Virus record (IMG/VR): IMGVR_UViG_3300005056_000001
Coordinates: 1-64,000 of that record
Direction: 5' to 3' (one strand)
Length of the DNA stretch: 64,000 bases
Notes under the pieces: generated by a model
The model's database searches: none
What the model saw: only the letters and a program-made list of their open reading frames with translations
What the model was told of the DNA's origin: nothing
Shown here: positions 1,238-14,901 of the stretch, piece by piece
Numbering within the stretch: position 1 is the first letter of the stretch
How the letters are laid out: every line of letters starts with the position of its first letter
Program-made: the position numbers and the translations under genes

Positions 1238-2236
1238 ATGAAAGACACTTCCATATTGGACGACGATTTTATCATACAAACACACGATGTAAAGACAAGC
1301 GAAAATGAATCGTTTCTAAACCCCACAAACAACAACATTGACATACTATCCATATGTGGCGCATCCACGGCAGGAGCAGGTGTTAGCGGTGCCTGTGAAT
1401 ACGTCACAGACAAGGGATACAAACCAACACACCTAATAACAGTAAGTTATGGCAGTGTTATATCCTTACCATTGCTTCTTGGGAAAAAAGAGGCAATCAA
1501 GCAGGTCAGCCTAAACCTGAATCACAAACAATTCTTTAGAGTGTCCCCTATGACAAAAAAAGGCAACATATCTTTTTGGGGTCTAATGAGGATTCTTGGT
1601 TCTGTTGTGGCACCCAATAAAATAAAATCCATAGGGGTACAAGATGTCCAAGGATTATTAAAGACGCACGTTTCAAAAAAAGAGTTCTATGACTACCAAA
1701 AGTCCGACAAGGCAGTGATATATATTTGTACAGTCAAGGCCTCCACAATGGAGCCTGTTCTGTTTAATATCAAGGATCGTAGTGTTACATACCAAAGATA
1801 CCTAGACATCGTTTCTGCAAGTTCTAGGATCCCTGTTTGGACACAGCCAATGGTTATTGACGGCGAGGAGTATTATGACGGAGGAATTACAGACATAAAT
1901 GCCTCATGTCTTCTGTTAGACAAGTTCAAGGACAGCGGTCAGAAAGTGAATGAATTGGTTTCAATCTACCCTTTTGGACGTGGCAACAAAGTAGAAGGCA
2001 AGACCATAAAAGGCGTGTTTGGGGCTATCTTTTGGCTCATAGAAACCCTCATAAAGAATGTCGGCAAGAACGACACACTCGAAGAAATGTTTAAGTGTAA
2101 AAACAGGGACATAAAACTTTCACAAATTCACATACCAAAAATATTGGACAGTCTTTATGATGTGGACAAGCCTAGGCTCCTGAAGCTTTATAATTTGGGG
2201 TTGCAATCTGCCAAGGATAATTTTAGAAAATGGTAA
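1238..2236 (+). CDS. patatin-like phospholipase
   Basis: Oxyanion loop ILSICGASTAG, nucleophile elbow TVSYG (variant GxSxG), ASSRIP, and catalytic YYDGG; start at MKDTS. Confidence 0.85.
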   Translation: MKDTSILDDDFIIQTHDVKTSENESFLNPTNNNIDILSICGASTAGAGVSGACEYVTDKGYKPTHLITVSYGSVISLPLLLGKKEAIKQVSLNLNHKQFFRVSPMTKKGNISFWGLMRILGSVVAPNKIKSIGVQDVQGLLKTHVSKKEFYDYQKSDKAVIYICTVKASTMEPVLFNIKDRSVTYQRYLDIVSASSRIPVWTQPMVIDGEEYYDGGITDINASCLLLDKFKDSGQKVNELVSIYPFGRGNKVEGKTIKGVFGAIFWLIETLIKNVGKNDTLEEMFKCKNRDIKLSQIHIPKILDSLYDVDKPRLLKLYNLGLQSAKDNFRKW

Positions 2237-2240
2237 AAAC

Positions 2241-2270
2241 AAGAAAGGCTCCATAATTGGAGCCTTTCTT
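2241..2270. terminator. bidirectional intrinsic terminator
   Basis: AAGAAAGGCTCCA-TAAT-TGGAGCCTTTCTT between convergent genes; same core as 24027-24054. Confidence 0.8.
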
Positions 2271-2299
2271 GTTTTGTTACTTGTTTTTTACTTTCTTGT

Positions 2300-2623
2300 T
2301 TACTTTCTGCCTTCTAGTACCGACATGTACTTTAGTGCCAATCTTAGACTCATCTTTATCAAGTCATTTATACGATCCTTATATGATTCGGATACCGCCC
2401 AAAGCACCGATTCGAACATTTCTGCATAAAGCCTTTCAGATTTCACCATATTTCTTAGAAGGTTGCTGTCAAAGTCACGCATTGTAGCACCGTCAGGTTC
2501 TTCTTTTAGTCCCTCTGTCACAGTCGCTCTCAATACCTTTAGTTCATCATGACTCAATGCATATGCCTCATGACTAACCAATTGTTCTTTTGTTGCATTT
2601 TCTAATTTTCTGTTGTCGAACAT
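2300..2623 (-). CDS. hypothetical protein
   Basis: ORF preceded by a host-type promoter. Confidence 0.7.
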   Translation of the reverse strand: MFDNRKLENATKEQLVSHEAYALSHDELKVLRATVTEGLKEEPDGATMRDFDSNLLRNMVKSERLYAEMFESVLWAVSESYKDRINDLIKMSLRLALKYMSVLEGRK

Positions 2624-2662
2624 AATATATTTTTTTAGTTTTAATTAATATTGATTGCCTTA

Positions 2663-2724
2663 CAAATATAGACAAAAAATCCATACCAAAAAATATGGAC
2701 ACGGATTTTAACATTTCTTTAACA
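2663..2724 (-). promoter_or_regulatory. Bacteroidota-type promoter (-7 TATATTTG) with terminator-like hairpin and upstream TTAACA-N5-TTAACA box
   Basis: caaatata at 2663-2670; hairpin aaaatcc..ggattt; direct repeat at 2708-2724. Confidence 0.75.
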
Positions 2725-2747
2725 TTTATTTTTTCTTGCCTCAAAAA

Positions 2748-3335
2748 CTACACAATCAATCGTTTTTGATAAAATTCAATCTTTTCCTTAATGCTTGCAT
2801 TGTGCAACTCGATGTCAATGGGGATAATTGTTAATTTATCACAACTCAGTGCCTCGTCAAAGGCTTCTTTTTTTGTATAGACACCTGCATTGGTTTTGTA
2901 AGTAGTGTACCCGCATGAATTATCACAATAGTAAGAATAGCCTTTTTTGACGTAGCAAAATTTAACTGAGTCGTTGTCTAGGATTTCATTCAAGTCCGAC
3001 ACACGTTTTCGCTCGGTCTTAATTTTTTCTATACTTTCTAGTGTGAGTTCCTTTTTCTCAAACGAATACATGTCCATTTCCTTGGCCCTCAAGACAGGAA
3101 TATTAAATAGCGTAATCTCCGAACCACTATCCGTGTCAACCATGGTCTCGTATTTTATTTGCTTGAGGATATCATTTTTGGCCTTGCCCCTGTCTGTGGC
3201 ATATCCATAGAATTCGGAGTGAAAAAATCCATCCTCGATTTTTGACAGGTTTAGCCTCCAACACTTGCTGACCATTTTATATTCTTGTGTCTTGTTTTCT
3301 TGTGCCGTATCCGTTGAATAATTAGTCGTATCCAT
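2748..3335 (-). CDS. hypothetical phage protein
   Basis: 195-aa ORF with a C-terminal YY.DNS.GYT...AGVYT..EA motif. Confidence 0.7.
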   Translation of the reverse strand: MDTTNYSTDTAQENKTQEYKMVSKCWRLNLSKIEDGFFHSEFYGYATDRGKAKNDILKQIKYETMVDTDSGSEITLFNIPVLRAKEMDMYSFEKKELTLESIEKIKTERKRVSDLNEILDNDSVKFCYVKKGYSYYCDNSCGYTTYKTNAGVYTKKEAFDEALSCDKLTIIPIDIELHNASIKEKIEFYQKRLIV

Positions 3336-3458
3336 TTATACTTTTAGTTTTTAATATACCTTTATTTATATATGATGGCTTTTTTGGGTACCCAAAGAGA
3401 ACGTGTACGATAATTCACAAAAAAATGAAAAATCGTACACGTGGAATTGTCGTACATA

Positions 3459-3947
3459 TTATACATCTCTTTTTAATTCCTCCCTTGTCCAAACAATATC
3501 CACCAATTCCTTTCCGAAATCGACAATGTATCCGTCGGGTCTAATTTCTTCGATAGATCCTGAACACTCCCATTCGCCAAGATGTCCACCGCTTCTTGAT
3601 ACAATCTCGGCATTGGGGAGATTAACTTTAACCGACTCACCCATCAACAACACGTCCTCGTGGTTGGCGGCATTTTCTTTTGTCTGAAAGTCCACAAATT
3701 CCCATCTGATACAATCATACCCCGAAAACTCGTTGAGTCTATGAAAATTGTAGTGTTTCCACCTTGTAATAAAGCAAGTGATGTCTCTTGCCAAATATTC
3801 GGGTTTGTCGCTTGAATACGCATGTTTTGCGATTACTATTAGTGGTGCGGACAACAAGTCTTTTGTTGCCACAAAGTCAAAATATACTAGAGACTTTTTA
3901 TACTCTTCTTTGCGTTCTTCGCTTGTGTAGAATGGTTCTTTAATCAC
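3459..3947 (-). CDS. hypothetical protein
   Basis: ORF in a co-oriented run. Confidence 0.65.
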   Translation of the reverse strand: MIKEPFYTSEERKEEYKKSLVYFDFVATKDLLSAPLIVIAKHAYSSDKPEYLARDITCFITRWKHYNFHRLNEFSGYDCIRWEFVDFQTKENAANHEDVLLMGESVKVNLPNAEIVSRSGGHLGEWECSGSIEEIRPDGYIVDFGKELVDIVWTREELKRDV

Positions 3948-3957
3948 GATTTATTTT

Positions 3958-4491
3958 TTAATTGGTTTTAAATTGAATATATGTTGCGACATCCTTTCGT
4001 CCTGTTTGTCTCTCTATTGCCTTTATGATTGCTTTTTGACAAGGTTCTGTCCAAATTTCTACATGTCCATTACGGTGAACATCCAACATTAGAGGGTATA
4101 TATATTCATCAAAATCCAAACCGCTCACATCGTGTTGCATCAGCACCGCAGCAGCTACGATTTTGGCAGCGGCCTCGTCACCCTCATTGGTAGCCATATT
4201 ATAATCCTCTACAACTTCACCAATAATAGGCTCCTGAGAATCCCAACCATATTTCCATACAATGTTAGCAACACCAATAAATGACGAAAGGTGTGGACGC
4301 TGATACTTGTTAAATCCTTCCATAAACAGTGCGGTCGCCTTTGCTAATTCGCTAGGTGTCACATTGCCTTCCATTTGTGTGACCGTGACCCCGTTTGATA
4401 GGTCTACATTTGTTCTGAACTCGAATTTCCCCATTAAACGAACCACCTGTCGTTGGCATTCTTTTGAATCGTATTTATAATCGTTATTCAT
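3958..4491 (-). CDS. hypothetical protein
   Basis: ORF in a co-oriented run. Confidence 0.7.
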   Translation of the reverse strand: MNNDYKYDSKECQRQVVRLMGKFEFRTNVDLSNGVTVTQMEGNVTPSELAKATALFMEGFNKYQRPHLSSFIGVANIVWKYGWDSQEPIIGEVVEDYNMATNEGDEAAAKIVAAAVLMQHDVSGLDFDEYIYPLMLDVHRNGHVEIWTEPCQKAIIKAIERQTGRKDVATYIQFKTN

Positions 4492-4573
4492 GATTTATTT
4501 TTTGATAGTTTTGTTAAATTAAGCACATTAAGCATATGTTGGTTGTGGGCATGATTCAAGTAAAACAAGAATG

Positions 4574-4849
4574 TTAACGCCTTATTGATTTTACAGGAAA
4601 CGACCAACCAATAGAACTGTTTTCATTAAAACCAACAGTCTTGTACTTTGTTCCTTTTTTGATTATACAATAATTGTATATATTTTTATGGGTGAATGTG
4701 TGAGGATTTGAACTTATAGATTTCTCGCCACAACCAAATTTCTCGACAACCTCCCAATTCAAGAATTTCTCGACACATAAACCATGTGTGTATGCATCGT
4801 GTGGAAGCCAATCCGATAATAATTCCATTTTTTTAATCAAGATTTTCAT
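4574..4849 (-). CDS. hypothetical protein
   Basis: ORF in a co-oriented run. Confidence 0.65.
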   Translation of the reverse strand: MKILIKKMELLSDWLPHDAYTHGLCVEKFLNWEVVEKFGCGEKSISSNPHTFTHKNIYNYCIIKKGTKYKTVGFNENSSIGWSFPVKSIRR

Positions 4850-4872
4850 ATCGTCCGATTTTATTCTGATTT

Positions 4873-5274
4873 TTACATTGGTGAATAATTAAAATAACTC
4901 TGACATTGTTGTTGCTCCTTTAGGATTATTCTATTATTTAAGGAACTAAAGGCAGGTTTCTCAATGTTTTTTGCCCGTAAGCGTTTAATCTTATCCACAG
5001 AATTCATGAACTTCTTTATCTTGTCAATAGCCTCGATTTTTGTGGTACAAATACCCATAAAAGGAGCCATATTAGCAGCCCCGAAAGCAATTGCGTGTTC
5101 CCACCCAACAACCATGTTTTCTACCATCACAAAAAACCGTGATAGTGGTACATTATTTTTGTTCCTGTGGTTTCCACATAAATTCCATTCGTCCTTGATA
5201 ACCTCATACACCTTGAATGTTAGCCCGTCGATAATTTGTGTAAAAACTGCATTGGAAAGTGTAGGAATGTTCAT
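4873..5274 (-). CDS. hypothetical protein
   Basis: ORF downstream of the promoter at 5323-5384. Confidence 0.7.
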   Translation of the reverse strand: MNIPTLSNAVFTQIIDGLTFKVYEVIKDEWNLCGNHRNKNNVPLSRFFVMVENMVVGWEHAIAFGAANMAPFMGICTTKIEAIDKIKKFMNSVDKIKRLRAKNIEKPAFSSLNNRIILKEQQQCQSYFNYSPM

Positions 5275-5322
5275 AGTAATCTATTGGTAGTGTGAAAAAG
5301 AATATTTAATAATATTGTCCTA

Positions 5323-5384
5323 CAAATATAAGGAAACATAAACCAAAAACACAACAAAACCGAAAGCTTAACGTTTTATTAACA
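5323..5384 (-). promoter_or_regulatory. host-type promoter with TTAACG-N5-TTAACA box
   Basis: caaatata at 5323-5330; box at 5368-5384. Confidence 0.7.
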
Positions 5385-5437
5385 TTTCAAACCATGTCTC
5401 CTACTTATCAGTGTCGTTGACCTGTGTAATATCTTTT

Positions 5438-5755
5438 TTAGATTGATCCTTTTGTCTTTTCCAAAAAAAACCTTGCAAAAAATAATTTCCATAAAACAAT
5501 TCGGTTCGTTTTTGAAAGCCCTGCCTTTGACATTGCCCTTTTCATGGCAACCTTACATCCATGCATCTGATTGTCTTTGTCTTTGTCATGTTTAACCGCC
5601 GTTCCTTTGCCTACCACGTCGCCATTCAGCAATACTTCACAGTCGGTTGTTGGTGGCCAAGCTTTTCCGATTCCGTTGTAATGTACATACGGACAAGATC
5701 TCCTGAAGGTTATTTCTATGGTATTATTATAGGGTGTTGTATGTGTCACTTTCAT
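5438..5755 (-). CDS. hypothetical protein
   Basis: ORF preceded by a hairpin/promoter cassette. Confidence 0.7.
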   Translation of the reverse strand: MKVTHTTPYNNTIEITFRRSCPYVHYNGIGKAWPPTTDCEVLLNGDVVGKGTAVKHDKDKDNQMHGCKVAMKRAMSKAGLSKTNRIVLWKLFFARFFLEKTKGSI

Positions 5756-5783
5756 GATTATATATTTTTGTTTATAATTTACT

Positions 5784-5838
5784 CAACAATATTAAACAAA
5801 AAAATCCGTACCACCAAATGATAGCACGGATTTTTAAT
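5784..5838 (-). promoter_or_regulatory. terminator/promoter cassette, near-identical copy at ~6264-6318
   Basis: caacaata..aaacaaaaaaatccgtaccaccaaatgatagcacg occurs twice, 480 bp apart. Confidence 0.7.
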
Positions 5839-5869
5839 ATAGTGGGCAATATCTAAGGATATAGTTAGC

Positions 5870-6232
5870 CTAGTCACGATTGTATAATATTCTTAAACAG
5901 TCCTTTAGCGCCTCGACCTTGCCAAAATTAACCGAGGCCGCATTGTATGTGGTGTCGCTGTAGGTGATATCCTTTCTACCATCCCACTTTTCCAACTCGT
6001 CTTCGGATTCTTTTAGGTGGTACTTAATTGAGTTTATATGGTTTCCTTTAGAAGGTTCCGTAATAATACAATAGTGTGTGTAGTCGGAGTCTAGAAGATA
6101 CCCACCATCATCTCCCTTGAATGTCTTATAGTTATTCGTCATGCTCCCCTTGAGAACACTGCCATCGTGTTTCCTAACCAATACAGGCGTGTCACGCTGT
6201 ACCATGTTGTCCTTTACTTCAATCCAATTCAT
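5870..6232 (-). CDS. DUF551-like protein
   Basis: N-terminal MNWIEVKD...PVLV and THY motif typical of DUF551. Confidence 0.55.
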   Translation of the reverse strand: MNWIEVKDNMVQRDTPVLVRKHDGSVLKGSMTNNYKTFKGDDGGYLLDSDYTHYCIITEPSKGNHINSIKYHLKESEDELEKWDGRKDITYSDTTYNAASVNFGKVEALKDCLRILYNRD

Positions 6233-6324
6233 TTGTATATATTGTTGTTTGTGAACATTTTTTCAACAATAGTAAACAAAAAAATCCGTACCACCAAATG
6301 ATAGCACGAATTTTTTTAATAAAA

Positions 6325-6451
6325 GGACGATACATCGGATTCGAACCAACAGCCCGCCATTACCTCGAGTAGCAAATAGACTACCCTCGACTTTGCAGAA
6401 TGGTTTACATTTCTGCTTTCATACACTTTCCAAGTATGTAGGTGTCGCCCC
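6325..6451 (-). ncRNA. tRNA-like non-coding RNA without a canonical anticodon arm
   Basis: Terminal stem GGGCGACAC/GTATCGTCC; D-like arm CATAC-TTGGAAAGT-GTATG; two further hairpins; T arm GTTGG-TTCGAAT-CCGAT. Confidence 0.65.
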
Positions 6452-6452
6452 T

Positions 6453-6749
6453 TTACTCTTCCAAACCAAGTTTAGCTAGAATAGCAGAAACTTTATTAGA
6501 TATTAATTTCGCAACACTTTCTTCTACCTTTGTCTGTATTTTGTAGGTTGACACTTGGTTTCTTATCGCATGCCTTAATACCTCGGTTGTTTGTTTTTCA
6601 ACTTCGCCTACGATATCGAAATTATCAATAGCCTTTTTTACACCCTCCTGTATTTTTGCCTCAATGTCTTTGTTATTCAGCACAACCTGACTCATGATAC
6701 TTGATGCTGCCACTTCTATCTCAAACTTTACTTTAGTCTCACCCTTCAT
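6453..6749 (-). CDS. hypothetical helical protein
   Basis: ORF. Confidence 0.7.
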   Translation of the reverse strand: MKGETKVKFEIEVAASSIMSQVVLNNKDIEAKIQEGVKKAIDNFDIVGEVEKQTTEVLRHAIRNQVSTYKIQTKVEESVAKLISNKVSAILAKLGLEE

Positions 6750-6791
6750 TTTGTTTTTATTTTTATTTTTATTATCCTATTAAATATTTAC

Positions 6792-7856
6792 CTAGAATAG
6801 CAATGAAATATCCACTCCCGTCTGTGCAAGAACCTCTCTTTCGATCTCGTCCCAAATGAATATATTATTGATTTGGGAATGCCCCTCGTCGATCAAGTCT
6901 CCTAGGCGGGCTTTGATTCCATCTCTAATACTGTGGGTGTCCTTGTTGTCTGCACATACAGTACTAATCATTGCATGCAACACAAACATTGATTCCCTGT
7001 TGTCCATCCCATAGGTCGGGAGCAAGATATCGTCAACCGAAATGAATTGCCCATGTTGTCCATATCTAAAAAGAATATTCCTGAAGTTGGGTATTTTTTT
7101 GATGTTTTGTTTGTGGGTGACGTTCCAATGCTCCATAAACAGTGTCACCGAAATTGCCAACTTGGTGGGTGATGGTTCCTTGGTAACCGCAACGATCACC
7201 GTGGGACTAGCAAGATCGTCTACGCCATAAAACTCATATCCGTTGGTATTGAAGGTAATAGGAGTACCCTTTTCTTTTTCTACAATTTCGCCGTCGCTTA
7301 TATCGCCAACACTGCTCAAATATCTATTGGCAGAATCTTTTGAGTCAAAATAGCCATCGTCTGTTGTTAGTATGGATATCTCTTTCCCGTCAATAAAAAT
7401 GGTGCTATCTGTAAAGTCCTCTACCATGACAGGAGACAATTTTGTTTTAAGATCCTCGTTGTTTAGGTTGTTTAGGTGATACCAAACATACAACGTTTTT
7501 TTGTTGTACGGACAACCCTCGCAAATCTCGGTATTTCTTAGACTTCTTCTTCCGCTGTCGTCTGATGTGTTAATTAGGCTATTAACAAATGCATATGCAT
7601 TTTGTTGTTGGTCAAGATTGCTGTATAGTTTAGGAATGTATTCCTTCCATGCCACAACCTGTTCCATGCTCTTTAACAAGGCCGACACAGGGGATTGGGT
7701 GTTGCTCATGGCATCATTTGAATAGGAGTTTAAAAATGTATCATCCTCTGTGTCATAACATATCGTAAATTCTCTCCACCCGCCCTGACACTTGGCATCG
7801 CCTAATTTTGAATGTATCTCCCATTGTTCCCAAATATCACAGACTCTTTTTTCCAT
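6792..7856 (-). CDS. hypothetical protein
   Basis: 354-aa ORF, translationally coupled to the upstream ORF. Confidence 0.8.
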   Translation of the reverse strand: MEKRVCDIWEQWEIHSKLGDAKCQGGWREFTICYDTEDDTFLNSYSNDAMSNTQSPVSALLKSMEQVVAWKEYIPKLYSNLDQQQNAYAFVNSLINTSDDSGRRSLRNTEICEGCPYNKKTLYVWYHLNNLNNEDLKTKLSPVMVEDFTDSTIFIDGKEISILTTDDGYFDSKDSANRYLSSVGDISDGEIVEKEKGTPITFNTNGYEFYGVDDLASPTVIVAVTKEPSPTKLAISVTLFMEHWNVTHKQNIKKIPNFRNILFRYGQHGQFISVDDILLPTYGMDNRESMFVLHAMISTVCADNKDTHSIRDGIKARLGDLIDEGHSQINNIFIWDEIEREVLAQTGVDISLLF

Positions 7857-8074
7857 TAGTAGCTTTTTTCGTTCTCGTTTAGTATGGCATCATAATTATC
7901 CTTGATGTAGTCAAGGAGATGTTCATTATGTTTTCTTTGTAACGTTTTTTCACACCACAAAAACCAATACGACGGGGCGTCTTCTAATGTTTTTCCGATA
8001 TGTTCCCCAAATTGGATGACAGTATCATCGTCATAAGGAAGATTGTCGTCTGTGGTCTTGGCAAATTTTTGCAT
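7856..8074 (-). CDS. small exonuclease-X C-terminal/DUF3820-like domain protein
   Basis: FGEHIGKTLEDAPSYWFLW resembles the FGK(H/Y)KG....VP..YL.W motif. Confidence 0.6.
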   Translation of the reverse strand: MQKFAKTTDDNLPYDDDTVIQFGEHIGKTLEDAPSYWFLWCEKTLQRKHNEHLLDYIKDNYDAILNENEKSY

Positions 8075-8122
8075 TATTTTTTGTTTTTTGATGAGGCGAT
8101 TGTCTTGCCTCGATTGTTTTTG

Positions 8123-8482
8123 TTAGGTTTTTATTAAAGCATCAATAGATTTGTTCTTTCCCATAAGATCCGTGTCAATAGAAAAATATGCCTTGTTCGT
8201 GAGGTGTGTTGCGATAAATCCACCAATAGTCACAAAATGTTTTGAGCCCAAATGGGTTCTTGTGTCGGCATGCTCATGCTTACAACACGGTGTTGTGAAG
8301 TCCGTACAGTCATGGTATTCCTTTTTGTCTTCTACTTGACCAAAGTCATATACCTGCCCACAATGTTCGCATATAACAGACTCCTCGCATAATGTATGAA
8401 AGAATTTAACCTCTTGGTAAGCCCCGTGTCGGCCAAGTATTCGAATGGTATCGCTTGAAATTTTTACAGTAGTCTTTTCCAT
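8123..8482 (-). CDS. hypothetical protein with putative Zn ribbon
   Basis: CEHC...PCC motifs. Confidence 0.6.
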   Translation of the reverse strand: MEKTTVKISSDTIRILGRHGAYQEVKFFHTLCEESVICEHCGQVYDFGQVEDKKEYHDCTDFTTPCCKHEHADTRTHLGSKHFVTIGGFIATHLTNKAYFSIDTDLMGKNKSIDALIKT

Positions 8483-8550
8483 AATTGATTTTTGTTAAAC
8501 TAATATTGGTAATGTATAACAAAAATACGACAATAACTAAAAAAGTCGTA

Positions 8551-8751
8551 CTAAAAAAGTCTTCCATGGTAAGTAATACCATCCTTGGTTATTGTTCCTT
8601 CGATGGTTCCTGCTTTTGTACCTGCTTTAGTCAGCTTAAATGTGCCATTACTAGATTTTTCGTAAGCAGTTAAAGCACGGAGCATGTCGTCTTTGTGATA
8701 GCACTTATAGCCCTGTAATATAAAATTATTTTTGTCTTCCTTTAATGACAT
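8551..8751 (-). CDS. hypothetical protein
   Basis: ORF whose start lies inside a 22-bp tandem repeat. Confidence 0.6.
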   Translation of the reverse strand: MSLKEDKNNFILQGYKCYHKDDMLRALTAYEKSSNGTFKLTKAGTKAGTIEGTITKDGITYHGRLF

Positions 8752-8794
8752 AGTTATTGTTCTTTAATGACATAGTTATTGTTCTTTAATGACA
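8740..8794. repeat. 22-bp tandem repeat x2.5
   Basis: ctttaatgacatagttattgtt at 8740 and 8762, partial copy at 8784. Confidence 0.9.
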
Positions 8795-8803
8795 CGATTA
8801 CTG

Positions 8804-9088
8804 TTACACGCAACCAATCTCAATGCGATTGGCAAGTTCAACGATAGAATCAATGGGCATAATCATCGGCAAATATACCGTACAATTGAAGCTGTCAATC
8901 TCGGTACCCTTTCGGTCGTCCAATATAAGAACAGCCCATCCTTTTGTGTTAAATAGATTTACGCTGTCGTTGAAGCGTTTTGTTTCGCCATCAAGATTTT
9001 TTGTACCAAGATTGGAATATAACACAAATGTTGCAATTGCTCCAAGGGCAAAGGTGAATTTTAAAACTGTTGTATAAGCACTTTTCAT
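8804..9088 (-). CDS. hypothetical membrane-anchored protein
   Basis: N-terminal hydrophobic segment. Confidence 0.6.
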   Translation of the reverse strand: MKSAYTTVLKFTFALGAIATFVLYSNLGTKNLDGETKRFNDSVNLFNTKGWAVLILDDRKGTEIDSFNCTVYLPMIMPIDSIVELANRIEIGCV

Positions 9089-9305
9089 GTTTTACTTTTT
9101 ATATGTGGTTAATTAATCATTATGACAAATGATTAGCATAACATAACGTTAAAAATGATGTTTAATATATTTACCAAACGACAAAGAATTTAGCAGGAGA
9201 ATAATTATCTCTCAAAGTAGAATGTATCGAAAAACCATTCGGGTTTTTCATAGATAATATGTTGTCTAAAATACCAACTATTGCCCCGAAAAGATAACAT
9301 CTTGT

Positions 9306-9956
9306 CTAATGCTCGTGATTATCGTCTTCGAAGTCGTGAGAAGCCTTTTGGGCCTGTTCGTGTTGGTTGCAATCATAATCGTTTTGGTCATAGCCAACAT
9401 AACGGGTGTAATTTAGCCTGTTGTATAGCATATATTTTTCGCTGTCTGAGCATTGTATCCTAGTGACGGTTATCTTTGTATTGTTTAATACTTTGCAAAG
9501 GTGTAGGGTATTGTTTTTCATCAATTCAAAGTCTTTTGAGTTTTTGATTGAGTCTAGCCATTCCATAACAACCAATGTGTCTGCCATTGCAGAAAGTCTG
9601 ATATGGTTCTTGTTTTGTATATTTTTTGGATTGACAACGCATAATTCATCTTTTTTGGCATCGTAAGAAAGTGAATACTTTTGCCAACCAATAGTACTCA
9701 AGGGATTGTTGCTTTGTGGACGGAATACATTTACCAATGCCGCCAATCTATAATACCCGTCTACAATTTTGTCGCCCGAGAAGCTGTCTCTTCTTAGTAC
9801 TATTGTGCCAATAGGCAGTCCACGCTTGATGGTGTCCAACAAGTCTTGGGTGAATGTGGAGGGTGGCAATTGTTTTTTTGATGCGGTTATGCGCTTTTCG
9901 CATATACGATTCAGTATATCAAAAAGGGATGTTTGTGTTGTTTCTGTTCTTGGCAT
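9306..9956 (-). CDS. DUF262 (GmrS/ParB-like) domain protein, stand-alone
   Basis: LLDTIKRGLPIGTIVL, IVDGYYRLAAL (DGQQR variant), LYNRLN. Confidence 0.7.
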   Translation of the reverse strand: MPRTETTQTSLFDILNRICEKRITASKKQLPPSTFTQDLLDTIKRGLPIGTIVLRRDSFSGDKIVDGYYRLAALVNVFRPQSNNPLSTIGWQKYSLSYDAKKDELCVVNPKNIQNKNHIRLSAMADTLVVMEWLDSIKNSKDFELMKNNTLHLCKVLNNTKITVTRIQCSDSEKYMLYNRLNYTRYVGYDQNDYDCNQHEQAQKASHDFEDDNHEH

Positions 9957-10038
9957 TGTGTTTTTGTTAATTGGTGATTGTGCAAAGTAATAAAAAAAAT
10001 CCGTCCAACGAAATGTTAGACGGATTTTAAATTCTTTG

Positions 10039-10335
10039 TTATGAGTTTAAGTATGTACACTTGATATCAGCCATACGAGAAGCTGTTATAATCACAACTG
10101 TTCTACACCTAGTACACGTCTGTTTTTGTGTTCCTATATCATCAATATCTCCTTGGTAATGCATTTTACCCTTACACTTCACTTCTTTGTCAACTTCATT
10201 ATGTTGAAAAGCATGACTTCTTGGGTACTGTGTGTCTAAATAGTCCTGATACAAATTGTACACTATCGCAATTGCACCAAGACAAGCAAACGTTCGTATT
10301 GCCCAATGAGCAAATAAAATATCTAAAAATTCCAT
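10039..10335 (-). CDS. membrane protein with C-terminal Cys motif
   Basis: N-terminal TM segment; CTRC. Confidence 0.6.
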   Translation of the reverse strand: MEFLDILFAHWAIRTFACLGAIAIVYNLYQDYLDTQYPRSHAFQHNEVDKEVKCKGKMHYQGDIDDIGTQKQTCTRCRTVVIITASRMADIKCTYLNS

Positions 10336-10429
10336 ATTATACAGTATTATCTAGTTAACAATTATTGATAACTTGTGTGCTAGAATTCGTTATAATCAAA
10401 AATCTCCACATCTAGCCACTCACGTTGTG

Positions 10430-10624
10430 CTATCCCGCCTCTCTCATCAAGTCGCAGATTGCGTTTGAGCTTCTCGTCAAGCCTCTCTTATAAGCCGATC
10501 GTTGCTCTTCTTTTACATGCGCATAGATTGCAGATCTAATGAGTTTTTGTTTCTCTTCGTCAGTTAGGTCTTGATTCTTTTTTAATCCGTTGATCGCTTC
10601 GATTTTTGCCATTAAATCATCCAT
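10430..10624 (-). CDS. hypothetical protein
   Basis: ORF; start MDDLMA. Confidence 0.55.
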   Translation of the reverse strand: MDDLMAKIEAINGLKKNQDLTDEEKQKLIRSAIYAHVKEEQRSAYKRGLTRSSNAICDLMREAG

Positions 10625-10723
10625 GTTATTATCTTTTTGTAGGTTATTATTGCGTTTTGTAAATTTTTTAAAACAATTCCTTATCACTAAAAATTCTGTT
10701 CTTAGTGCTTTCGGCTCCTTACC

Positions 10724-11023
10724 CTAGGAATTTCCTCTAGACTCCTTAGAAATCTTATTAAACATTTCTCGTCCCATATAGGCAGGAGAAAACTCTGCAT
10801 ATCTTTTTGTTTTATATGGCAACATGTGAGGCTTTCCCATCACACTAACAACCCCCTTTTCCTTGAAGAATGAAAGTGTAGCCTGTACGTCGTCGGGATG
10901 AACAACCACCAAAACACCTGCCTTGATAGAGCCTTTTCCTTGTATACACCTAAGTGTTTTTATTCCTAGACTTTTTAATCCTTGCTTCATTTCTTTGGCA
11001 TCTAATCTTAAAGGAGCTTTCAT
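10724..11023 (-). CDS. hypothetical protein
   Basis: ORF; start MKAPLR after a duplicated promoter. Confidence 0.65.
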   Translation of the reverse strand: MKAPLRLDAKEMKQGLKSLGIKTLRCIQGKGSIKAGVLVVVHPDDVQATLSFFKEKGVVSVMGKPHMLPYKTKRYAEFSPAYMGREMFNKISKESRGNS

Positions 11024-11045
11024 TTTTATATTTTTAAAGTGTGAC

Positions 11046-11088
11046 ACAAATCTACAACAAGTTTTACGATTACGCAAGTTTTACGTAA
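11046..11088 (-). promoter_or_regulatory. duplicated 43-bp promoter (second copy 11434-11476), -7 TAGATTTG
   Basis: acaaatctacaacaagtttt...ttacgcaagttttacgtaa occurs twice. Confidence 0.75.
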
Positions 11089-11098
11089 GATTGATGTT

Positions 11099-11392
11099 TT
11101 AATAATCGGAATATGGAATATCGAAAGACGATGCTAACACGTTAGGTGTAAAGTAAGGGCTTTGTTTTGTTGCCTCAATTACTCTAGTTCGTGTTAGAGT
11201 CACCTTTCCTTTTACAACCTTCATGGATTCAATTTCTTCAGCATCGTAAGTCGCCAATGATTCCATCATAACCCCGTTTTCGGTAACCTCAAGAACGGTT
11301 TCGATTATCTTCTTGTCGGCAAAAATACACCAATAAGAAAGTATTGTACCTTTTATTGCCTCAATTGTCGTGTTGCCTACTTTGGTTTCCAT
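11099..11392 (-). CDS. hypothetical protein
   Basis: ORF; start METKVG. Confidence 0.65.
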   Translation of the reverse strand: METKVGNTTIEAIKGTILSYWCIFADKKIIETVLEVTENGVMMESLATYDAEEIESMKVVKGKVTLTRTRVIEATKQSPYFTPNVLASSFDIPYSDY

Positions 11393-11626
11393 ATTGCCTA
11401 CTTTAATTTGTTTACGTTTGATTACTTGTTGATACAAATCTACAACAAGTTTTTTAATTACGCAAGTTTTACGTAATTTATATTTGTTTTATTTAAAACT
11501 TTCTTCAAAAACAACAAAAATCCGCCACTCCGAGTGTGTAGGAGTGGCGGCTTAAAATGTCGTGTGTTATACTGTCGTGTTTATGATTGGTGCTATCGTA
11601 CCTCTTCGTATAGTATACCATACGCC

Positions 11627-11965
11627 TTAAAAATTCATCTTTATACCATACGTCTTGTACAGACTGTCTATTGTATAAATACCGATCACAGGCGGTTTGT
11701 CGGGGTATTCGGCAATGGCATGGTATTCGTTCTTTTGTTCACCATCCTTCTTGTATGTCAATTTTCGAACCAAGAGTATTATGTCTTCATTACTGAATTG
11801 TATATAATTTCTACACTTCACGTCTTCCGAAAAACCCCCGAACGACTCGACGGTGTCCTTAATATAAACACATTCAAACTTCATTGGCTTGGGGTTGATA
11901 CGTGTAATCATTTGAAATGGCATATCGTCTGTTTTTAAACATCCCAAGAATAAACCTTGGGACAC
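11627..11965 (-). CDS. hypothetical protein (start uncertain)
   Basis: ORF. Confidence 0.55.
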   Translation of the reverse strand: MSQGLFLGCLKTDDMPFQMITRINPKPMKFECVYIKDTVESFGGFSEDVKCRNYIQFSNEDIILLVRKLTYKKDGEQKNEYHAIAEYPDKPPVIGIYTIDSLYKTYGIKMNF

Positions 11966-12561
11966 AATTCTTTAATCTTTTTATAGGCAGCCAAAAATTC
12001 TTCGGTTTGGTATTTGTCCATGGGCATGATCTTCTGTATATAGGACAAGACTGCATTATAACCACCGCCTTTGTTAAATTCGACAAGCACAGGAACAGCC
12101 CATTCACAATCCAAAACATCAAATCCGACCACACAACATGATGCCTCAAAAAACAAATCATTGGCATTAAGATATAATGAGGTTGTCGACTCGACCAAGT
12201 CCTTGTATGGGTTGTCATTGCTCTCCCAATCAATAGCTTCTTCTGAAGAAGTCTCGTTTGGTGGATATTTTTGACTAATAAAAGGCATAGAAGGGAATAG
12301 CCGTTTATTTAGTTCTAAAAACCTGTCCCCATTGGACATAAAATTTCTGTCTTTATCTTCTTCATATGGACACACAAATGTTAGTGGTTCGTCTAGCAGA
12401 TTATTACCCCTAGAAAAGAAGGTCTCGATCCATAGGTGTGAAAATCTATCCTTATCCTCTTCCCAATTTCCCGTCATTTTATAGACACCCTCGATCTCGT
12501 CACTTTCTAAATGTTTGTCATACGTACTCTTTATAAGAGATTTGTAGCAGAATCCTATCAT
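11935..12561 (-). CDS. hypothetical protein
   Basis: 208-aa ORF. Confidence 0.7.
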   Translation of the reverse strand: MIGFCYKSLIKSTYDKHLESDEIEGVYKMTGNWEEDKDRFSHLWIETFFSRGNNLLDEPLTFVCPYEEDKDRNFMSNGDRFLELNKRLFPSMPFISQKYPPNETSSEEAIDWESNDNPYKDLVESTTSLYLNANDLFFEASCCVVGFDVLDCEWAVPVLVEFNKGGGYNAVLSYIQKIMPMDKYQTEEFLAAYKKIKELCPKVYSWDV

Positions 12562-12573
12562 TTTTTATCATTT

Positions 12574-12957
12574 TTAACTTGCAAAATCAATGGCAACTAT
12601 TTTGTTATTGAGCATACCAAAGGAGTCCATTTTTTCTTCTATCGGAAATTTATATTGATTGTTGTCACCAAACTTTATAAAATTGTCATAATCGAAGGCG
12701 AACCAATCTTTTCTTGTTATCTCGTCACATCGTGGACATATATTCAGAAAACCTCCCCACACAGAAAAATAGATCGGACAAAGCTTGGATGTGTTGTCAC
12801 CTCCTGTCCATTCCTTTTCTGACATATTACCAAGCAGACCCAACAAAAACCCTTTCCATGAGCCTAGTATCGGGAACTTGAAGGCCAATCTTTTTGTCAA
12901 AACAACACACCTACTATGTCCGCACCTCATGGTCGGTCTATATCTATAACCTCCCAA
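12574..12957 (-). CDS. minimal protein-kinase-like fold protein
   Basis: GHSRCV...AFKFP, NMSE, EEKMDSFG, VAIDF in kinase-subdomain order. Confidence 0.5.
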   Translation of the reverse strand: MGGYRYRPTMRCGHSRCVVLTKRLAFKFPILGSWKGFLLGLLGNMSEKEWTGGDNTSKLCPIYFSVWGGFLNICPRCDEITRKDWFAFDYDNFIKFGDNNQYKFPIEEKMDSFGMLNNKIVAIDFAS

Positions 12958-13247
12958 TCTGTGGCATCATGGTCTTTGGTGAATATACCCACATCTTTTT
13001 TTGGACTAACCCATACATCATTGTTGGTTTTTATGTCAACATTGTCTTTTGTGGAAAATAGTCTCCAACGGGTGTATAATACACTTTCACTTGTGCCAAA
13101 ATCAAACATTTTAAACTTGCGTGTGTCGTTTTTTCGTTGGACTATTTTGCCGTCTTTCATTTCTTGCTTTGCCCAATTCCATGAACCCCTAAGCGAATAT
13201 CGTATGACAATCCAATCACGGACTGAAACAACTATTTTCTTAATCAT
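12927..13247 (-). CDS. Tad2/DUF2829-like protein (paralog 1)
   Basis: WNWAKQEMKDGKIVQR...DHDATDWEVI. Confidence 0.5.
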   Translation of the reverse strand: MIKKIVVSVRDWIVIRYSLRGSWNWAKQEMKDGKIVQRKNDTRKFKMFDFGTSESVLYTRWRLFSTKDNVDIKTNNDVWVSPKKDVGIFTKDHDATDWEVIDIDRP

Positions 13248-13534
13248 GTCTCACATTTTGGGTGTATCGGAAGATGTCTCCACCAATAAACATAATAATA
13301 ATCAATGTTGGACTCCAATAGCTCACCCTCTTGATTAATCCATGCCTCATTCGATTCGCTATCTGTATAAATCACAGAAGTTGGTAGTTCGCCAATATCG
13401 TAGTATTCGAAAACATCTTCTATCGTTGCTATTGTGGTGTTAAATTTACCGAACGTTGATTTTTTATATAAAACCAACACTTCAACTCCCTTTTTTGGAA
13501 GATTATCCTTTGTTTTTCTTATCCATTCTTTCAT
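13244..13534 (-). CDS. DUF551-like protein
   Basis: MKEWIRKTKDNLPKKGVEVLV...VYWWRHLPIHP. Confidence 0.65.
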   Translation of the reverse strand: MKEWIRKTKDNLPKKGVEVLVLYKKSTFGKFNTTIATIEDVFEYYDIGELPTSVIYTDSESNEAWINQEGELLESNIDYYYVYWWRHLPIHPKCET

Positions 13535-13535
13535 A

Positions 13536-13814
13536 TCAATAAAATTGTGGCAGGTTATTATCCCACTCAAAAACCTCCCAATCGGTTCTTTTGAGGGTCT
13601 TTAAAAATATATTGGAACTGCTCCAATTGGAGTCCTCCTTGTTGTCGGAAAAGTCCCACACAATTCTTTGGTTTTGTGGGTTGTCAAGTTTATACTTTAT
13701 GGTACCCAAGGCAGAGGCGGGTCGAACAATCCGACCTGCCTCCATCTGTCTAAGTGCCCACTTCCATGTGCCTCTTAATCCAAGTGTGTTTGATATAGTA
13801 TTTTTAATTGACAT
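13536..13814 (-). CDS. Tad2/DUF2829-like protein (paralog 2)
   Basis: WKWALRQMEAGRIVR...W...LKRTDWEVF. Confidence 0.5.
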   Translation of the reverse strand: MSIKNTISNTLGLRGTWKWALRQMEAGRIVRPASALGTIKYKLDNPQNQRIVWDFSDNKEDSNWSSSNIFLKTLKRTDWEVFEWDNNLPQFY

Positions 13815-13866
13815 TGATTGTATGGCTGTGTTTTATGCGTCCAATTTGTGTTTATTCGCATCCTCC

Positions 13867-14100
13867 CTAGTCTTGCAATGTGGATTGAGGCATGTCATCC
13901 TGAAGCTCGGACAATGCCTCAATCAATTCCGACAAACTTTCTCGGGTCAAGTAAAGAGATGCAACCTTTCGATTCGATCGTTCTTGAGTTTTTTCGGTTA
14001 TCGTTAAAATGATTGGCAACGGCCCACTCTTCTCCTCCACACACAGGGTGTTTTCAATAGTTCCAACATTGTCGAATGAGAATTTTGTTTCTTTTTTCAT
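13867..14100 (-). CDS. hypothetical protein
   Basis: ORF. Confidence 0.6.
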   Translation of the reverse strand: MKKETKFSFDNVGTIENTLCVEEKSGPLPIILTITEKTQERSNRKVASLYLTRESLSELIEALSELQDDMPQSTLQD

Positions 14101-14110
14101 TGTGTTATTA

Positions 14111-14596: not shown

Positions 14597-14619
14597 ATAT
14601 AATTATTGTTTTATTTTGT

Positions 14620-14901
14620 TTACTCCTCAAATTTCCATGTTCTCCAATCATCGGGTAATACCGTGCCCCTAGTAAAAATAATAATCGGAGTTTCTGTACC
14701 GTCACGGTTTTTAATGCTTTGAATATTCTTACCTTCCTCAAAACGAACGTCTCCGTATGTTTTGAGGGCCTTTAGTATGGCATCTTTGGTGAAATGTAAT
14801 GAGGTATTGATATTATGCACCTCCATACTCTCCTTTAAAATCTCTTCTCTTATCTTTTTTTCCAATTCCTCGGCTGTGCGGTTTTTAATCTTGTTTTTCA
14901 T
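14620..14901 (-). CDS. hypothetical protein, paralog of 14922-15242
   Basis: Shared ELEKKIRE.ILKE.M..HNIN.SLHFTKD.ILKALKT. Confidence 0.7.
   Translation of the reverse strand: MKNKIKNRTAEELEKKIREEILKESMEVHNINTSLHFTKDAILKALKTYGDVRFEEGKNIQSIKNRDGTETPIIIFTRGTVLPDDWRTWKFEE

What the first reader, a model, noticed from the sequence alone, without database searches (positions are those of the whole stretch)
6325..6451. ~127-nt tRNA-mimic RNA with D and T arms and two hairpins replacing the anticodon arm
Seen: a 9-10 bp terminal stem, a D-like arm CATAC-TTGGAAAGT-GTATG, hairpin GCAGAA..TTCTGC, hairpin TCGAG.GTAG..CTACTCGA, and a canonical TTCGAAT T arm. It sits right after a stop codon and before a terminator/promoter cassette, about 44 kb from the tRNA cluster. 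It has no 7-nt anticodon loop and no CCA. Inference: an elbow-mimicking decoy for tRNA-binding proteins, anticodon nucleases or ribosome-associated sensors, or an RNase P-processed mRNA 3' element.
Basis: partly seen in the sequence, partly recalled or inferred. Interest (0 to 1): 0.72.

Follow-up and report, generated by a model that had tools for sequence, protein, structure and literature searches.

The report
Oversized orphan tRNA-like RNA in jumbo phage
A 127-base stretch in a 368-kb phage genome really does have the ends, D arm and T arm of a tRNA but cannot decode a codon. No relative, family match or transcript was found, so it is a curious but unproven tRNA-derived RNA gene.

Summary
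On the minus strand (window 6451 to 6325) there is a 9-10 bp terminal stem, a 5-bp D-like arm with a GG loop, two hairpins, a 14-nt linker and a T arm with the consensus loop. It lies 1 nt after a stop codon and just before an intrinsic terminator.

A strict scan for this frame finds 1 hit in the real 368-kb genome against 4 hits in 300 shuffled genomes. Its GC is 47% against 35-38% in the flanks.

It is not a known family. Rfam gives nothing at E<=10. ARAGORN fails with relaxed, intron and tmRNA settings, although the intron setting does call control genes elsewhere.

It is an orphan. Pattern scans of the viral, metagenome and genome collections, blastn and a covariance model found no homologue. 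The nearest relative (about 62-66% protein identity) lacks the whole 13-kb accessory island that holds it. No RNA run was listed, so expression is untested.

Best reading (confidence 0.4): a tRNA-derived, non-decoding tRNA-like RNA, closest to the phage's own class II tRNA-Tyr. It would be co-transcribed with accessory genes and cut out by tRNA-processing enzymes. A decaying pseudo-tRNA is the main rival (0.3). The decoy function is speculation.

The parts
6325..6451 (-). Whole 127-nt tRNA-like element (e1)
   Evidence: Sequence read directly. Frame scan gives 1 real hit against 4 in 300 shuffled genomes. GC is 47.2% against 35-38% in the flanks. No ORF of note on either strand.
6442..6450 (-). 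5' strand of the terminal (acceptor-like) stem, p2-10. G1 (6451) is unpaired or wobbles with U128.
   Evidence: Pairs with 6325-6333 at 8 of 9 positions, with a C.A mismatch at p8/p121. RNAfold pairing probability is 0.86-0.95 for the outer 6 pairs. G4.U125 would sit at the 3:70 position if the mature 5' end were G2 (read from the sequence).
6420..6438 (-). D-like arm: 5-bp stem and 9-nt loop UUGGAAAGU containing GG
   Evidence: Pairing probability is 0.64.
6395..6416 (-). Hairpin 1: 6-bp stem and 10-nt loop AUGUAAACCA, in the anticodon-arm position
   Evidence: Pairing probability is 0.99 for the four outer pairs, 0.70 and 0.39 for the two nearest the loop. Local folding z is -6.6. The loop begins like the phage tRNA-Tyr loop (CUGUAAA) and aligns to it in register.
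6365..6390 (-). Hairpin 2: 4+4 bp with a GG bulge and 8-nt loop UCUAUUUG, in the long-variable-arm position
   Evidence: Local folding z is -2.05. Pairing probability is 0.35-0.66.
6351..6364 (-). 14-nt G-rich linker GGUAAUGGCGGGCU, with no counterpart in tRNA
   Evidence: Unpaired in the hand-drawn fold. No enriched antisense target in the phage genome.
6334..6350 (-). T arm: GUUGG / UUCGAAU / CCGAU, directly abutting the 3' strand of the terminal stem
   Evidence: Contains the 11-mer GGTTCGAATCC. Such T-arm motifs number 5 in the genome against 0.70 expected. The stem is thermodynamically weak, with pairing probability 0.09.
6325..6333 (-). 3' strand of the terminal stem (p119-127). Followed by UUUUA, with no encoded CCA.
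   Evidence: The phage's own tRNAs also lack an encoded CCA.
6453..6749 (-). Upstream 98-aa ORF whose TAA stop lies 1 nt before the element. Last gene of the probable co-transcript.
   Evidence: No Pfam or PHROG family. The Atlas model is low-confidence and only unnamed viral clusters come up.
6277..6318 (-). Intrinsic terminator directly 3' of the element
   Evidence: The same core recurs at 5835-5800, and there are only these two copies in the genome.
6233..6276 (-). Promoter-like and leader part of the duplicated cassette, upstream of the next ORF (5870-6232)
   Evidence: The cassette copy at 5791 has the same TATTGTTGA and TATA-rich layout. A promoter function is inferred.

Best explanation
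e1 is a tRNA-derived gene for a non-decoding, oversized tRNA-like RNA.

It keeps the parts of a tRNA that processing and elbow-binding factors recognise:
- an acceptor-like stem;
- a D loop with GG;
- a consensus T loop.

The decoding end is remodelled. In the anticodon-arm position there is a 6-bp arm with a 10-nt loop that still carries U-GUA-A, as in tRNA-Tyr. After it come a long variable-arm-like hairpin and a 14-nt linker. The acceptor plus T stack is 14 layers instead of 12.

Inferred mechanism:
1. It is transcribed as the last unit of an accessory-gene operon that ends at the terminator 7 nt downstream.
2. RNase P cuts at its 5' end, and it is trimmed and possibly CCA-tailed at its 3' end, like the phage's own CCA-less tRNAs.
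3. It persists as a stable RNA of about 125-130 nt.
4. The tRNA frame serves as a processing and stability scaffold and as a tRNA mimic. The RNA does not act as an adaptor in translation.

The genome context fits a role in a conflict over tRNA, for example binding a tRNA-directed host factor. That last step is speculation.

Shown: the anatomy, the improbability by chance, the lack of any known family, and the position in a transcription unit. Inferred: transcription, processing, stability and function.
For: - Anatomy, read directly.
- Chance is unlikely: the strict scan finds 1 real hit against 4 in 300 shuffled genomes, and T-arm motifs number 5 against 0.70 expected.
- GC is 47% against 35-38% in the flanks, in the top 1.5% of intergenic windows. 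The phage tRNAs have 54-57%.
- All five helices are intact apart from one C.A mismatch, while the loops and junctions are expanded. Hairpins 1 and 2 are individually more stable than shuffles (z -6.6 and -2.05).
- The best alignment among the phage's own tRNAs is to class II tRNA-Tyr, with the arms in register (z 2.56).
- It lies 1 nt after a stop codon and 7 nt before a terminator. The genuine tRNAs of this phage are likewise interspersed with ORFs and lack an encoded CCA.
- The phage and its relative carry other irregular tRNA-like genes. One is e2, at 27.8 bits on the Rfam tRNA model. The other is the 131-nt r1 in the relative, which also sits just before a terminator-like hairpin (seen by eye).
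- Two RNA-ligase family genes are present, one 1.7 kb from the tRNA cluster.
- Precedents exist. T4 rnaC is a 139-nt stable RNA with a T arm and a terminal stem. Irregular five-stem tRNAs that are not used in translation are described in PMC5389517.
Against: - No homologue was found anywhere, so there is no covariation and no evidence of selection.
- The nearest relative lacks the element and the island around it.
- A second sample carries an identical copy, which is uninformative.
- No RNA data exist.
- The T stem is weak (pairing probability 0.09), and the whole-molecule stability is ordinary.
- The similarity to tRNA-Tyr is modest (z 2.56).
- The criteria for the chance estimate were set after seeing the element.
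Confidence: 0.4

Rival explanations
1. e1 is a decaying pseudo-tRNA. A former class II tRNA gene, perhaps a tRNA-Tyr copy, picked up insertions in its loops and junctions. It is now non-functional DNA in a fast-turnover accessory island.
For: - It is an orphan. It is absent from the nearest relative, and the island has no shared genes.
- No homologue was found anywhere.
- It shows many departures from a canonical tRNA: 9-bp acceptor, 3-nt linker, 10-nt loop, a 14-nt extra segment and a weak T stem.
- The same genome holds another degenerate tRNA-like gene, e2.
- It resembles tRNA-Tyr.
Against: - Neutral decay should break stems. Here every helix is intact but for one mismatch, and the changes are confined to loops and junctions.
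- The T loop is still a perfect 11-mer consensus.
- The extra sequence is itself folded into stable hairpins.
- GC is still raised.
Confidence: 0.3
2. e1 is a cis-acting 3' UTR processing element. Its purpose would be to recruit RNase P or RNase Z so that the upstream accessory mRNA is separated from its terminator hairpin, which would set that mRNA's half-life. The released RNA would have no function of its own.
For: - It starts 1 nt after the stop codon of the last ORF and ends 7 nt before the terminator.
- Only the features that tRNA-processing enzymes need (terminal stem, T loop, GG loop) are canonical.
Against: - A minimal acceptor plus T-arm helix would be enough for this role. Two extra hairpins, a D arm and a linker would be unnecessary.
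- The duplicated terminator cassette at 5835-5757 works without such an element.
- No data on transcript ends are available.
Confidence: 0.1
3. Chance resemblance. A GGTTCGAATCC word and a few hairpins in an intergenic region next to a terminator happen to look like a tRNA.
For: - The whole-element folding z-score is -0.57.
- The T arm is not favoured thermodynamically.
- The loose frame scan gives 0.13 hits per shuffled genome.
- The criteria are post hoc.
Against: - The strict scan gives 4 hits in 300 shuffled genomes.
- The features coincide in the correct tRNA order and spacing, in a 220-nt intergenic gap, on the coding strand.
- GC is raised.
- Genuine tRNAs have equally unremarkable z-scores.
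Confidence: 0.07
4. e1 is a working decoding tRNA with one or more introns or an expanded anticodon loop, for example a spliced tRNA-Tyr, a suppressor or a frameshifting tRNA.
For: - The loop of hairpin 1 contains U-GUA-A-A, the tRNA-Tyr anticodon-loop sequence.
- Phage contigs with short insertions in the anticodon loop do exist (L055 and L029), as does r1 in the relative.
- RNA-ligase genes are present.
Against: - ARAGORN with introns of 0-120 nt calls r1 and the control genes but not e1.
- Rfam tRNA and tRNA-Sec give no hit at E<=10.
- Removing a single segment does not restore a 7-nt loop.
- The 14-layer acceptor plus T stack exceeds even tRNA-Sec.
- The long ORFs are open under code 11, so nothing points to recoding.
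- The phage already has a normal tRNA-Tyr.
Confidence: 0.05
5. e1 is an attP-type remnant. The phage would carry the 3' part of a host tRNA gene as an integration site.
For: T arm plus acceptor 3' ends are common attachment cores. The pattern scan mostly hit tmRNA 3' ends in viral contigs.
Against: - The 3' block GGTTCGAATCCGA-NNN-ATCGTCC occurs in no tRNA among 185,579 species genomes. The only hit was a chance match in coding sequence.
- A matching 5' strand and a D arm are present, so this is a complete unit and not a fragment.
Confidence: 0.02

Closest known systems
Bacterial class II tRNA, in particular the phage's own tRNA-Tyr(GUA) at window 51354-51437
   Same: Same order of five helices: acceptor, D, anticodon-position arm, long variable-position arm, T. 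Both have GG in the D loop, a consensus T loop, U-GUA-A in the loop of the anticodon-position arm, and no encoded CCA. This is the best pairwise alignment among the phage tRNAs.
   Different: - 9-bp acceptor instead of 7.
- 3-nt linker instead of 2.
- 5-bp D stem.
- 3 nt instead of 1 between the D arm and the next arm.
- 10-nt loop instead of 7.
- 14 extra nt before the T arm.
- No score on the Rfam tRNA model.
allo-tRNAs and other irregular tRNAs from soil and sediment metagenomes (Mukai et al. 2017, PMC5389517)
   Same: Both have a lengthened acceptor stem, a 6-bp anticodon-position stem and a long variable arm. A U follows the stem, as in U73. That paper describes five-stem junctions and extra loops, and members that are charged or toxic but not used in translation. 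It also notes a link to accessory and toxin-antitoxin loci.
   Different: allo-tRNAs keep a 12-bp acceptor branch (8/4 or 9/3), a 7-nt anticodon loop and a D tetraloop. e1 has 9/5 (14 layers), a 10-nt loop and a 9-nt D loop. They were found with the tRNA-Sec model, which does not hit e1.
Bacteriophage T4 species 1 RNA (rnaC, 139 nt)
   Same: Both are phage-encoded RNAs of about 130 nt with a canonical T arm (UUCGAAU loop) that abuts a stem formed by the two ends, and with internal hairpins in place of a decoding arm. rnaC is a stable RNA whose function is unknown (from my own knowledge).
   Different: rnaC sits inside the tRNA cluster, has no D arm with GG, and folds very stably (z -4.6). There is no sequence or covariance-model similarity to e1.
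r1, a 131-nt oversized tRNA gene in the relative phage G001 (L068:7717-7847)
   Same: Same phage clade, same size, tRNA ends and elbow, a structured insert at the decoding end, a terminator-like hairpin directly after it (seen by eye), no Rfam hit, and also an orphan.
   Different: r1 has a fully canonical acceptor, D arm and T arm. Its insert is a single 59-64-nt branch in the anticodon loop. ARAGORN calls it an intron-containing tRNA. It lies at a different locus, and its sequence similarity to e1 is not significant (p about 0.07).
YrlA / bacterial Y RNA tRNA-like module
   Same: Both are non-decoding tRNA mimics with a T arm and a D arm and no free CCA.
   Different: YrlA is circularly permuted. 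Its ends lie in the anticodon-side stem that binds Ro, and its acceptor is closed by a loop (from my own knowledge). e1 has tRNA topology. There is no Rfam match and no TROVE/Ro gene in the phage.
tmRNA tRNA-like domain
   Same: Both begin GGGGC at the 5' end, have a G.U wobble in the acceptor stem and a T arm next to the 3' strand, and are non-decoding.
   Different: e1 has no tag reading frame, no pseudoknots and a real D stem, and it is 127 nt against about 350. ARAGORN tmRNA mode and Rfam are both negative.

Membership tests
tRNA (Rfam RF00005) | Covariance-model score of at least 29 bits | tested here: not met
   No tRNA hit on 6200-6600 even at E<=10. The four real tRNAs score 35-62 bits or are called by ARAGORN. 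e2 scores 27.8 bits.
tRNA (Rfam RF00005) | 7-nt anticodon loop with U33 and a purine at 37 | tested here: not met
   The hairpin loops are 10 and 8 nt. The 10-nt loop contains U-GUA-A plus three extra nt.
tRNA (Rfam RF00005) | 12-layer acceptor plus T stack (7/5) | tested here: not met
   9 + 5 = 14 layers, including one mismatch.
tRNA (Rfam RF00005) | T loop UUCRANY closed by G53-C61, and GG in the D loop | tested here: met
   GG-UUCGAAU-CC, and UUGGAAAGU.
Intron-containing tRNA | Removing one segment in the anticodon loop restores a canonical tRNA | tested here: not met
   ARAGORN -i with introns of 0-120 nt finds nothing spanning e1. The same run calls r1 and genes in L055 and L029. Non-canonical intron positions were not scanned systematically.
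tmRNA | tRNA-like domain plus a tag reading frame. Detected by ARAGORN or the Rfam tmRNA models. | tested here: not met
   ARAGORN -m found nothing even at a lowered threshold. Rfam found nothing.
tRNA-Sec / allo-tRNA | 13-bp (Sec) or 12-bp (8/4, 9/3) acceptor branch, long D stem with a tetraloop, 7-nt anticodon loop | tested here: not met
   14 layers, 9-nt D loop and 10-nt loop. No tRNA-Sec hit. The long variable arm and the U after the stem are shared (for the family's features).
YrlA / Y RNA | Ro-binding stem formed by the two ends, permuted tRNA-like module, Ro/Rsr partner | tested here: not met
   No Rfam match. The topology is that of a tRNA, not permuted. No TROVE domain in the phage. 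The host genome is unknown.
T4 rnaC-like stable RNA | Sequence or structure homology to rnaC | tested here: not met
   Model R1 does not hit rnaC in L075. The two share only a general layout.
Functional structured RNA (any family) | Conservation with compensatory base changes | tested here: inconclusive
   No homologue could be retrieved. A second sample is identical. The searches were word- or pattern-based, not an exhaustive covariance-model scan.
Functional structured RNA (any family) | Discrete transcript with defined ends | not testable with these tools
   No RNA run was listed. Only low-depth DNA contigs were available.

The most novel reading that the evidence does not exclude
e1, and independently r1 in the sister phage, would be examples of an unrecognised class of natural tRNA-scaffolded effector RNAs in jumbo phages. 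A tRNA frame would guarantee excision by RNase P and 3' processing, nuclease resistance and an elbow. The remodelled decoding end would be the active part. In e1 that is a tRNA-Tyr-like anticodon loop with three extra nucleotides, a second hairpin and a G-rich linker. It could act as a decoy or sponge for a host tRNA-directed defence nuclease or sensor. Such genes would be swapped in and out of accessory islands as fast as protein anti-defence genes.
Probability: 0.12. Interest if true: 0.75.

Novelty: new variant of a known kind. Interest (0 to 1): 0.36.

Why it matters
Phage tRNA genes are increasingly read as counter-measures to host nucleases that cut tRNA. Non-decoding tRNA mimics in phages have been known since T4 rnaC but remain without a function.

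This is a clean case for testing whether phages use the tRNA shape as a scaffold or decoy. It has processing and elbow features, an altered decoding end, and a position in an accessory island. It also shows that standard tRNA and Rfam annotation miss such genes entirely. As it stands it is a single unconserved sequence, so its value is as a lead and not a result.

Tried and rejected
- **Rfam.** The gathering threshold on the whole window and the E<=10 threshold on 6200-6600 gave nothing on e1. Whole-genome Rfam scans added only a borderline abiF hit that is a terminator hairpin.
- **ARAGORN.** Default, lowered-threshold, intron, mitochondrial and tmRNA modes gave no full-length call.
- **Homologue searches**, all negative:
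  - exact 24-mer in viral contigs;
  - D-loop plus T-loop pattern in viral contigs, which returned only tmRNA 3' ends and ordinary tRNAs;
  - two loop-only patterns in viral contigs;
  - a pattern in metagenome contigs, which returned only ordinary tRNAs downstream of a chance TTGGAAAGT;
  - the 3' block in genome contigs, one chance coding hit;
  - blastn against isolate phages;
  - covariance model R1 on the whole genome, the relative and all fetched loci.
- **Synteny route.** The 354-aa neighbour is an orphan. The 98-aa neighbour has one weak relative without the element. Patatin relatives led to the syntenic locus in the nearest relative, which lacks the island.
- **Sequencing runs.** Only DNA runs of one study were listed, with identical low-depth contigs. 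No RNA run was listed. A second JGI sample is identical.
- **Neighbouring proteins.** No Pfam, PHROG or Atlas lead.
- **Antisense targets** of e1 in the phage genome are at the chance level.
- **Homology of e1 to r1** is not significant. r1 is not conserved upstream of its neighbour gene in three further relatives.
- **Left out.** I did not run a systematic in-silico deletion scan to look for non-canonical introns.

Full report
**What the window is.** The window is the first 64 kb of a 368,109-bp IMG/VR virus record with overlapping ends. The overlap is 99 nt, so this is a circular assembly. The record comes from a subsurface metagenome. It encodes a tail sheath, a ribonucleotide reductase with an intein, and an SbcCD-like nuclease. 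It is therefore a jumbo myovirus. Long ORFs are open under code 11. Genome-wide, ARAGORN finds four tRNAs (Ser-UGA, Tyr-GUA, His-GUG, Ala-UGC), all at 50.9-51.7 kb on the minus strand.

**The observation.** The element lies on the minus strand, from 6451 to 6325. Position p corresponds to window coordinate 6452-p.
- G1 is unpaired, or wobbles with U128.
- p2-7 pairs with p122-127, and p9-10 with p119-120. There is one C.A mismatch at p8/p121.
- A 3-nt linker follows.
- The D-like arm is CAUAC / UUGGAAAGU / GUAUG.
- AAA follows.
- Hairpin 1 has 6 bp and the 10-nt loop AUGUAAACCA.
- AAAG follows.
- Hairpin 2 has 4+4 bp with a GG bulge and the 8-nt loop UCUAUUUG.
- A 14-nt linker, GGUAAUGGCGGGCU, follows.
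- The T arm is GUUGG / UUCGAAU / CCGAT, and it directly abuts the 3' strand of the terminal stem.

All drawn pairs are standard pairs. The TAA stop of a 98-aa ORF lies 1 nt upstream. An intrinsic terminator begins 7 nt downstream. No credible ORF overlaps the element. Three points need adding: the bulge is 2 nt, there is a 14-nt linker, and the T stem is weak.

**Is it more than chance?**
- I scanned for a T arm with loop TTCRANY and a 5-bp stem, an adjacent stem with at least 8 of 9 pairs, and a 5-bp D arm with GG in the loop. This finds exactly one site in the real genome, which is e1. It finds 4 sites in 300 block-shuffled genomes.
- T-arm motifs number 5 in the genome against 0.70 expected.
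- A looser definition gives 0.13 hits per shuffled genome.
- The criteria were set after seeing the element, so these figures are indicative only.
- GC is 47.2% against 35-38% in the flanks. That is in the top 1.5% of intergenic 127-nt windows. The phage tRNAs have 54-57%.
- The whole-molecule folding z-score is -0.57. The four genuine tRNAs give -0.1 to -1.3, so this measure does not discriminate.
- Taken separately, hairpin 1 (z -6.6) and hairpin 2 (z -2.05) are more stable than shuffles. The T arm is not, and it has only 0.09 pairing probability in the ensemble.

**Known families.**
- Rfam release 15 gives no match on e1 at the gathering threshold or at E<=10. That covers tRNA, tRNA-Sec, tmRNA and YrlA.
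- ARAGORN fails at lowered thresholds, with introns of 0-120 nt, in mitochondrial mode and in tmRNA mode.
- The intron setting is a valid control. It calls intron-bearing tRNAs in two unrelated viral contigs (L055, L029), and it calls the oversized tRNA r1 in the sister phage.
- It is also not permuted like YrlA, and the phage has no Ro/TROVE gene.

**Relatives.**
- The neighbouring 354-aa protein has no homologue among 5.8 billion proteins.
- The nearest relative I could reach is a 137-kb fragment (G001), with sheath identity of 66% and patatin identity of 62%.
- A Logan contig of that lineage spans the syntenic place. Between the patatin gene and the 1750-aa gene it has 4.1 kb of unrelated small ORFs. 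This genome has 13 kb there (window 2236-15291). Neither e1 nor any tRNA is present.
- e1 therefore sits in a hypervariable accessory island of orphan genes.
- Four pattern scans of viral contigs, one of metagenome contigs and one of 185,579 species genomes found no homologue. Neither did blastn against isolate phages or a covariance model built from e1.
- A second sample carries an identical copy.
- Public DNA runs add no variants, and no RNA run was listed.
- Conservation, covariation and expression therefore remain untested or negative.

**What it most resembles.**
- Among the phage's own tRNAs it aligns best to class II tRNA-Tyr (z 2.56), with the arms in register. The D loops are UUGGAAAG and UUGGAGAG. 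The anticodon-position arms are AGA-AUGUAAA-UCU and AGA-CUGUAAA-UCU. Both have a hairpin in the variable-arm position and the T loop.
- The layout is that of a class II tRNA whose helices are intact but whose loops and junctions are all enlarged.
- The acceptor plus T stack has 14 layers, against 12 in tRNA and 13 in tRNA-Sec.
- If the mature 5' end were G2, G4.U125 would occupy the 3:70 position used by AlaRS. This is a reading of the sequence and was not tested.
- The absence of CCA is shared with all four real tRNAs.
- T4 rnaC is the classical precedent: 139 nt, with a T arm, a terminal stem and long hairpins. It shows no homology to e1.
- The irregular five-stem tRNAs of Mukai et al. (PMC5389517) are the closest described kind. 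They have longer acceptor and anticodon stems and long variable arms, and some are not used in translation. They keep a 12-bp acceptor branch and a 7-nt loop.

**Context that bears on function.**
- The phage has a second irregular tRNA-like gene, e2 (window 50691-50767). It scores 27.8 bits on the Rfam tRNA model, has the loop CUUAUAC, no D arm, and an 18-nt insert in the variable region.
- The sister phage has r1 (L068:7717-7847). It is 131 nt long, with canonical acceptor, D and T arms. A 59-64-nt branched insert sits at the anticodon loop and contains a T-arm-like hairpin. A terminator-like hairpin, which I identified by eye in the sequence, follows it. Rfam does not hit it.
- r1 is absent from the syntenic place here and in three further relatives.
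- The similarity of e1 to r1 is not significant.
- Two RNA-ligase family genes exist, one of them 1.7 kb from the tRNA cluster.
- No CCA-adding enzyme was found. The Rnl1 search rang nowhere, not even in the control genomes, so it is uninformative.
- No antisense target of e1 stands out in the phage genome.

**Conclusion.** The best-supported reading is a tRNA-derived, non-decoding tRNA-like RNA gene. It would be transcribed at the end of an accessory operon and released by tRNA-processing enzymes. The tRNA frame would provide processing, stability and an elbow.
- Confidence in that reading is about 0.4.
- A decaying pseudo-tRNA is the main rival, at about 0.3.
It has no direct support.
- The finding is a real oddity and a reasonable lead, but it is a single unconserved sequence.

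Noticed in passing
window 50691-50767 (minus): A second irregular tRNA-like gene (e2) lies at the end of the tRNA cluster. It scores 27.8 bits on the Rfam tRNA model, just under the 29-bit cut-off. Its anticodon loop is CUUAUAC (UAU), the D arm is missing, and there is an 18-nt insert in the variable region. Default ARAGORN does not call it.
   Followed up: partly
L068:7717-7847 (+), which is G001 107717-107847: The sister phage has a 131-nt oversized tRNA (r1). Its acceptor, D and T arms are canonical. A 59-64-nt branched insert at the anticodon loop contains a T-arm-like hairpin (GGGG-UUCGAGU-CCC). A terminator-like hairpin (seen by eye) follows it. Rfam gives no hit. ARAGORN -i calls it tRNA-Ala(agc) with a 59-nt intron, although it has no G3:U70. 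It is absent from the syntenic place in this genome and in three other relatives.
   Followed up: partly
L055 (about 4748-4865 and 12284-12403, minus) and L029 (5454-5572): Unrelated viral contigs with large tRNA arrays carry tRNA genes (Gln-UUG, Tyr-GUA, Leu, Arg) with 22-46-nt inserts just after the anticodon. I inspected the Gln and Tyr inserts, and each contains a T-arm-like hairpin (for example GTAAG-TTCAACT-CTTAC). This may be a recurring short tRNA insert type in phages.
   Followed up: no
window 6318-6233 and 5835-5757 (minus): A terminator plus promoter-like cassette of about 80 nt (core CGTGCTATCATTTGGTGGTACGG, then TATTGTTGA and a TATA-rich box) occurs exactly twice in the genome. 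The two copies follow adjacent small ORFs.
   Followed up: partly
window 53364-54143 (minus) and L008:5729-6403 (+): Two RNA-ligase family (PF09414) genes are present, one of them 1.7 kb from the tRNA cluster. No CCA-adding enzyme or TROVE gene was found. The Rnl1 search was uninformative, because its controls did not ring.
   Followed up: partly
window 2236-15291: A 13-kb island of small orphan minus-strand ORFs lies between the patatin-like gene and the 1750-aa gene. In the nearest relative it is replaced by 4.1 kb of unrelated ORFs. A precomputed list tags the 216-aa ORF (9306-9956) as GmrSD_N, but my own Pfam scan found nothing for it.
   Followed up: partly
L011:588-3029 (+): The large subunit of ribonucleotide reductase carries an intein splicing domain.
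   Followed up: no
window 60362-63328 (minus): A 988-aa fusion of an N6 DNA methyltransferase (Eco57I-like) with a DEAD/helicase C domain.
   Followed up: no
L009:10566-10602 (minus), genome about 194.57 kb: A borderline Rfam abiF RNA hit (37.9 bits against a cut-off of 37). It is a terminator-like hairpin after a small gene that looks HicA-like by eye. There are no tandem repeats, so it is probably a false positive.
   Followed up: partly
window 6299-6468: In the two DNA runs, the short Logan contig that covers e1 has a somewhat higher word depth than most neighbouring contigs of the same run in X1 (6.57 against about 2-4). In X2 it does not stand out (3.8). This could be noise, or shared words with another genome.
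   Followed up: no
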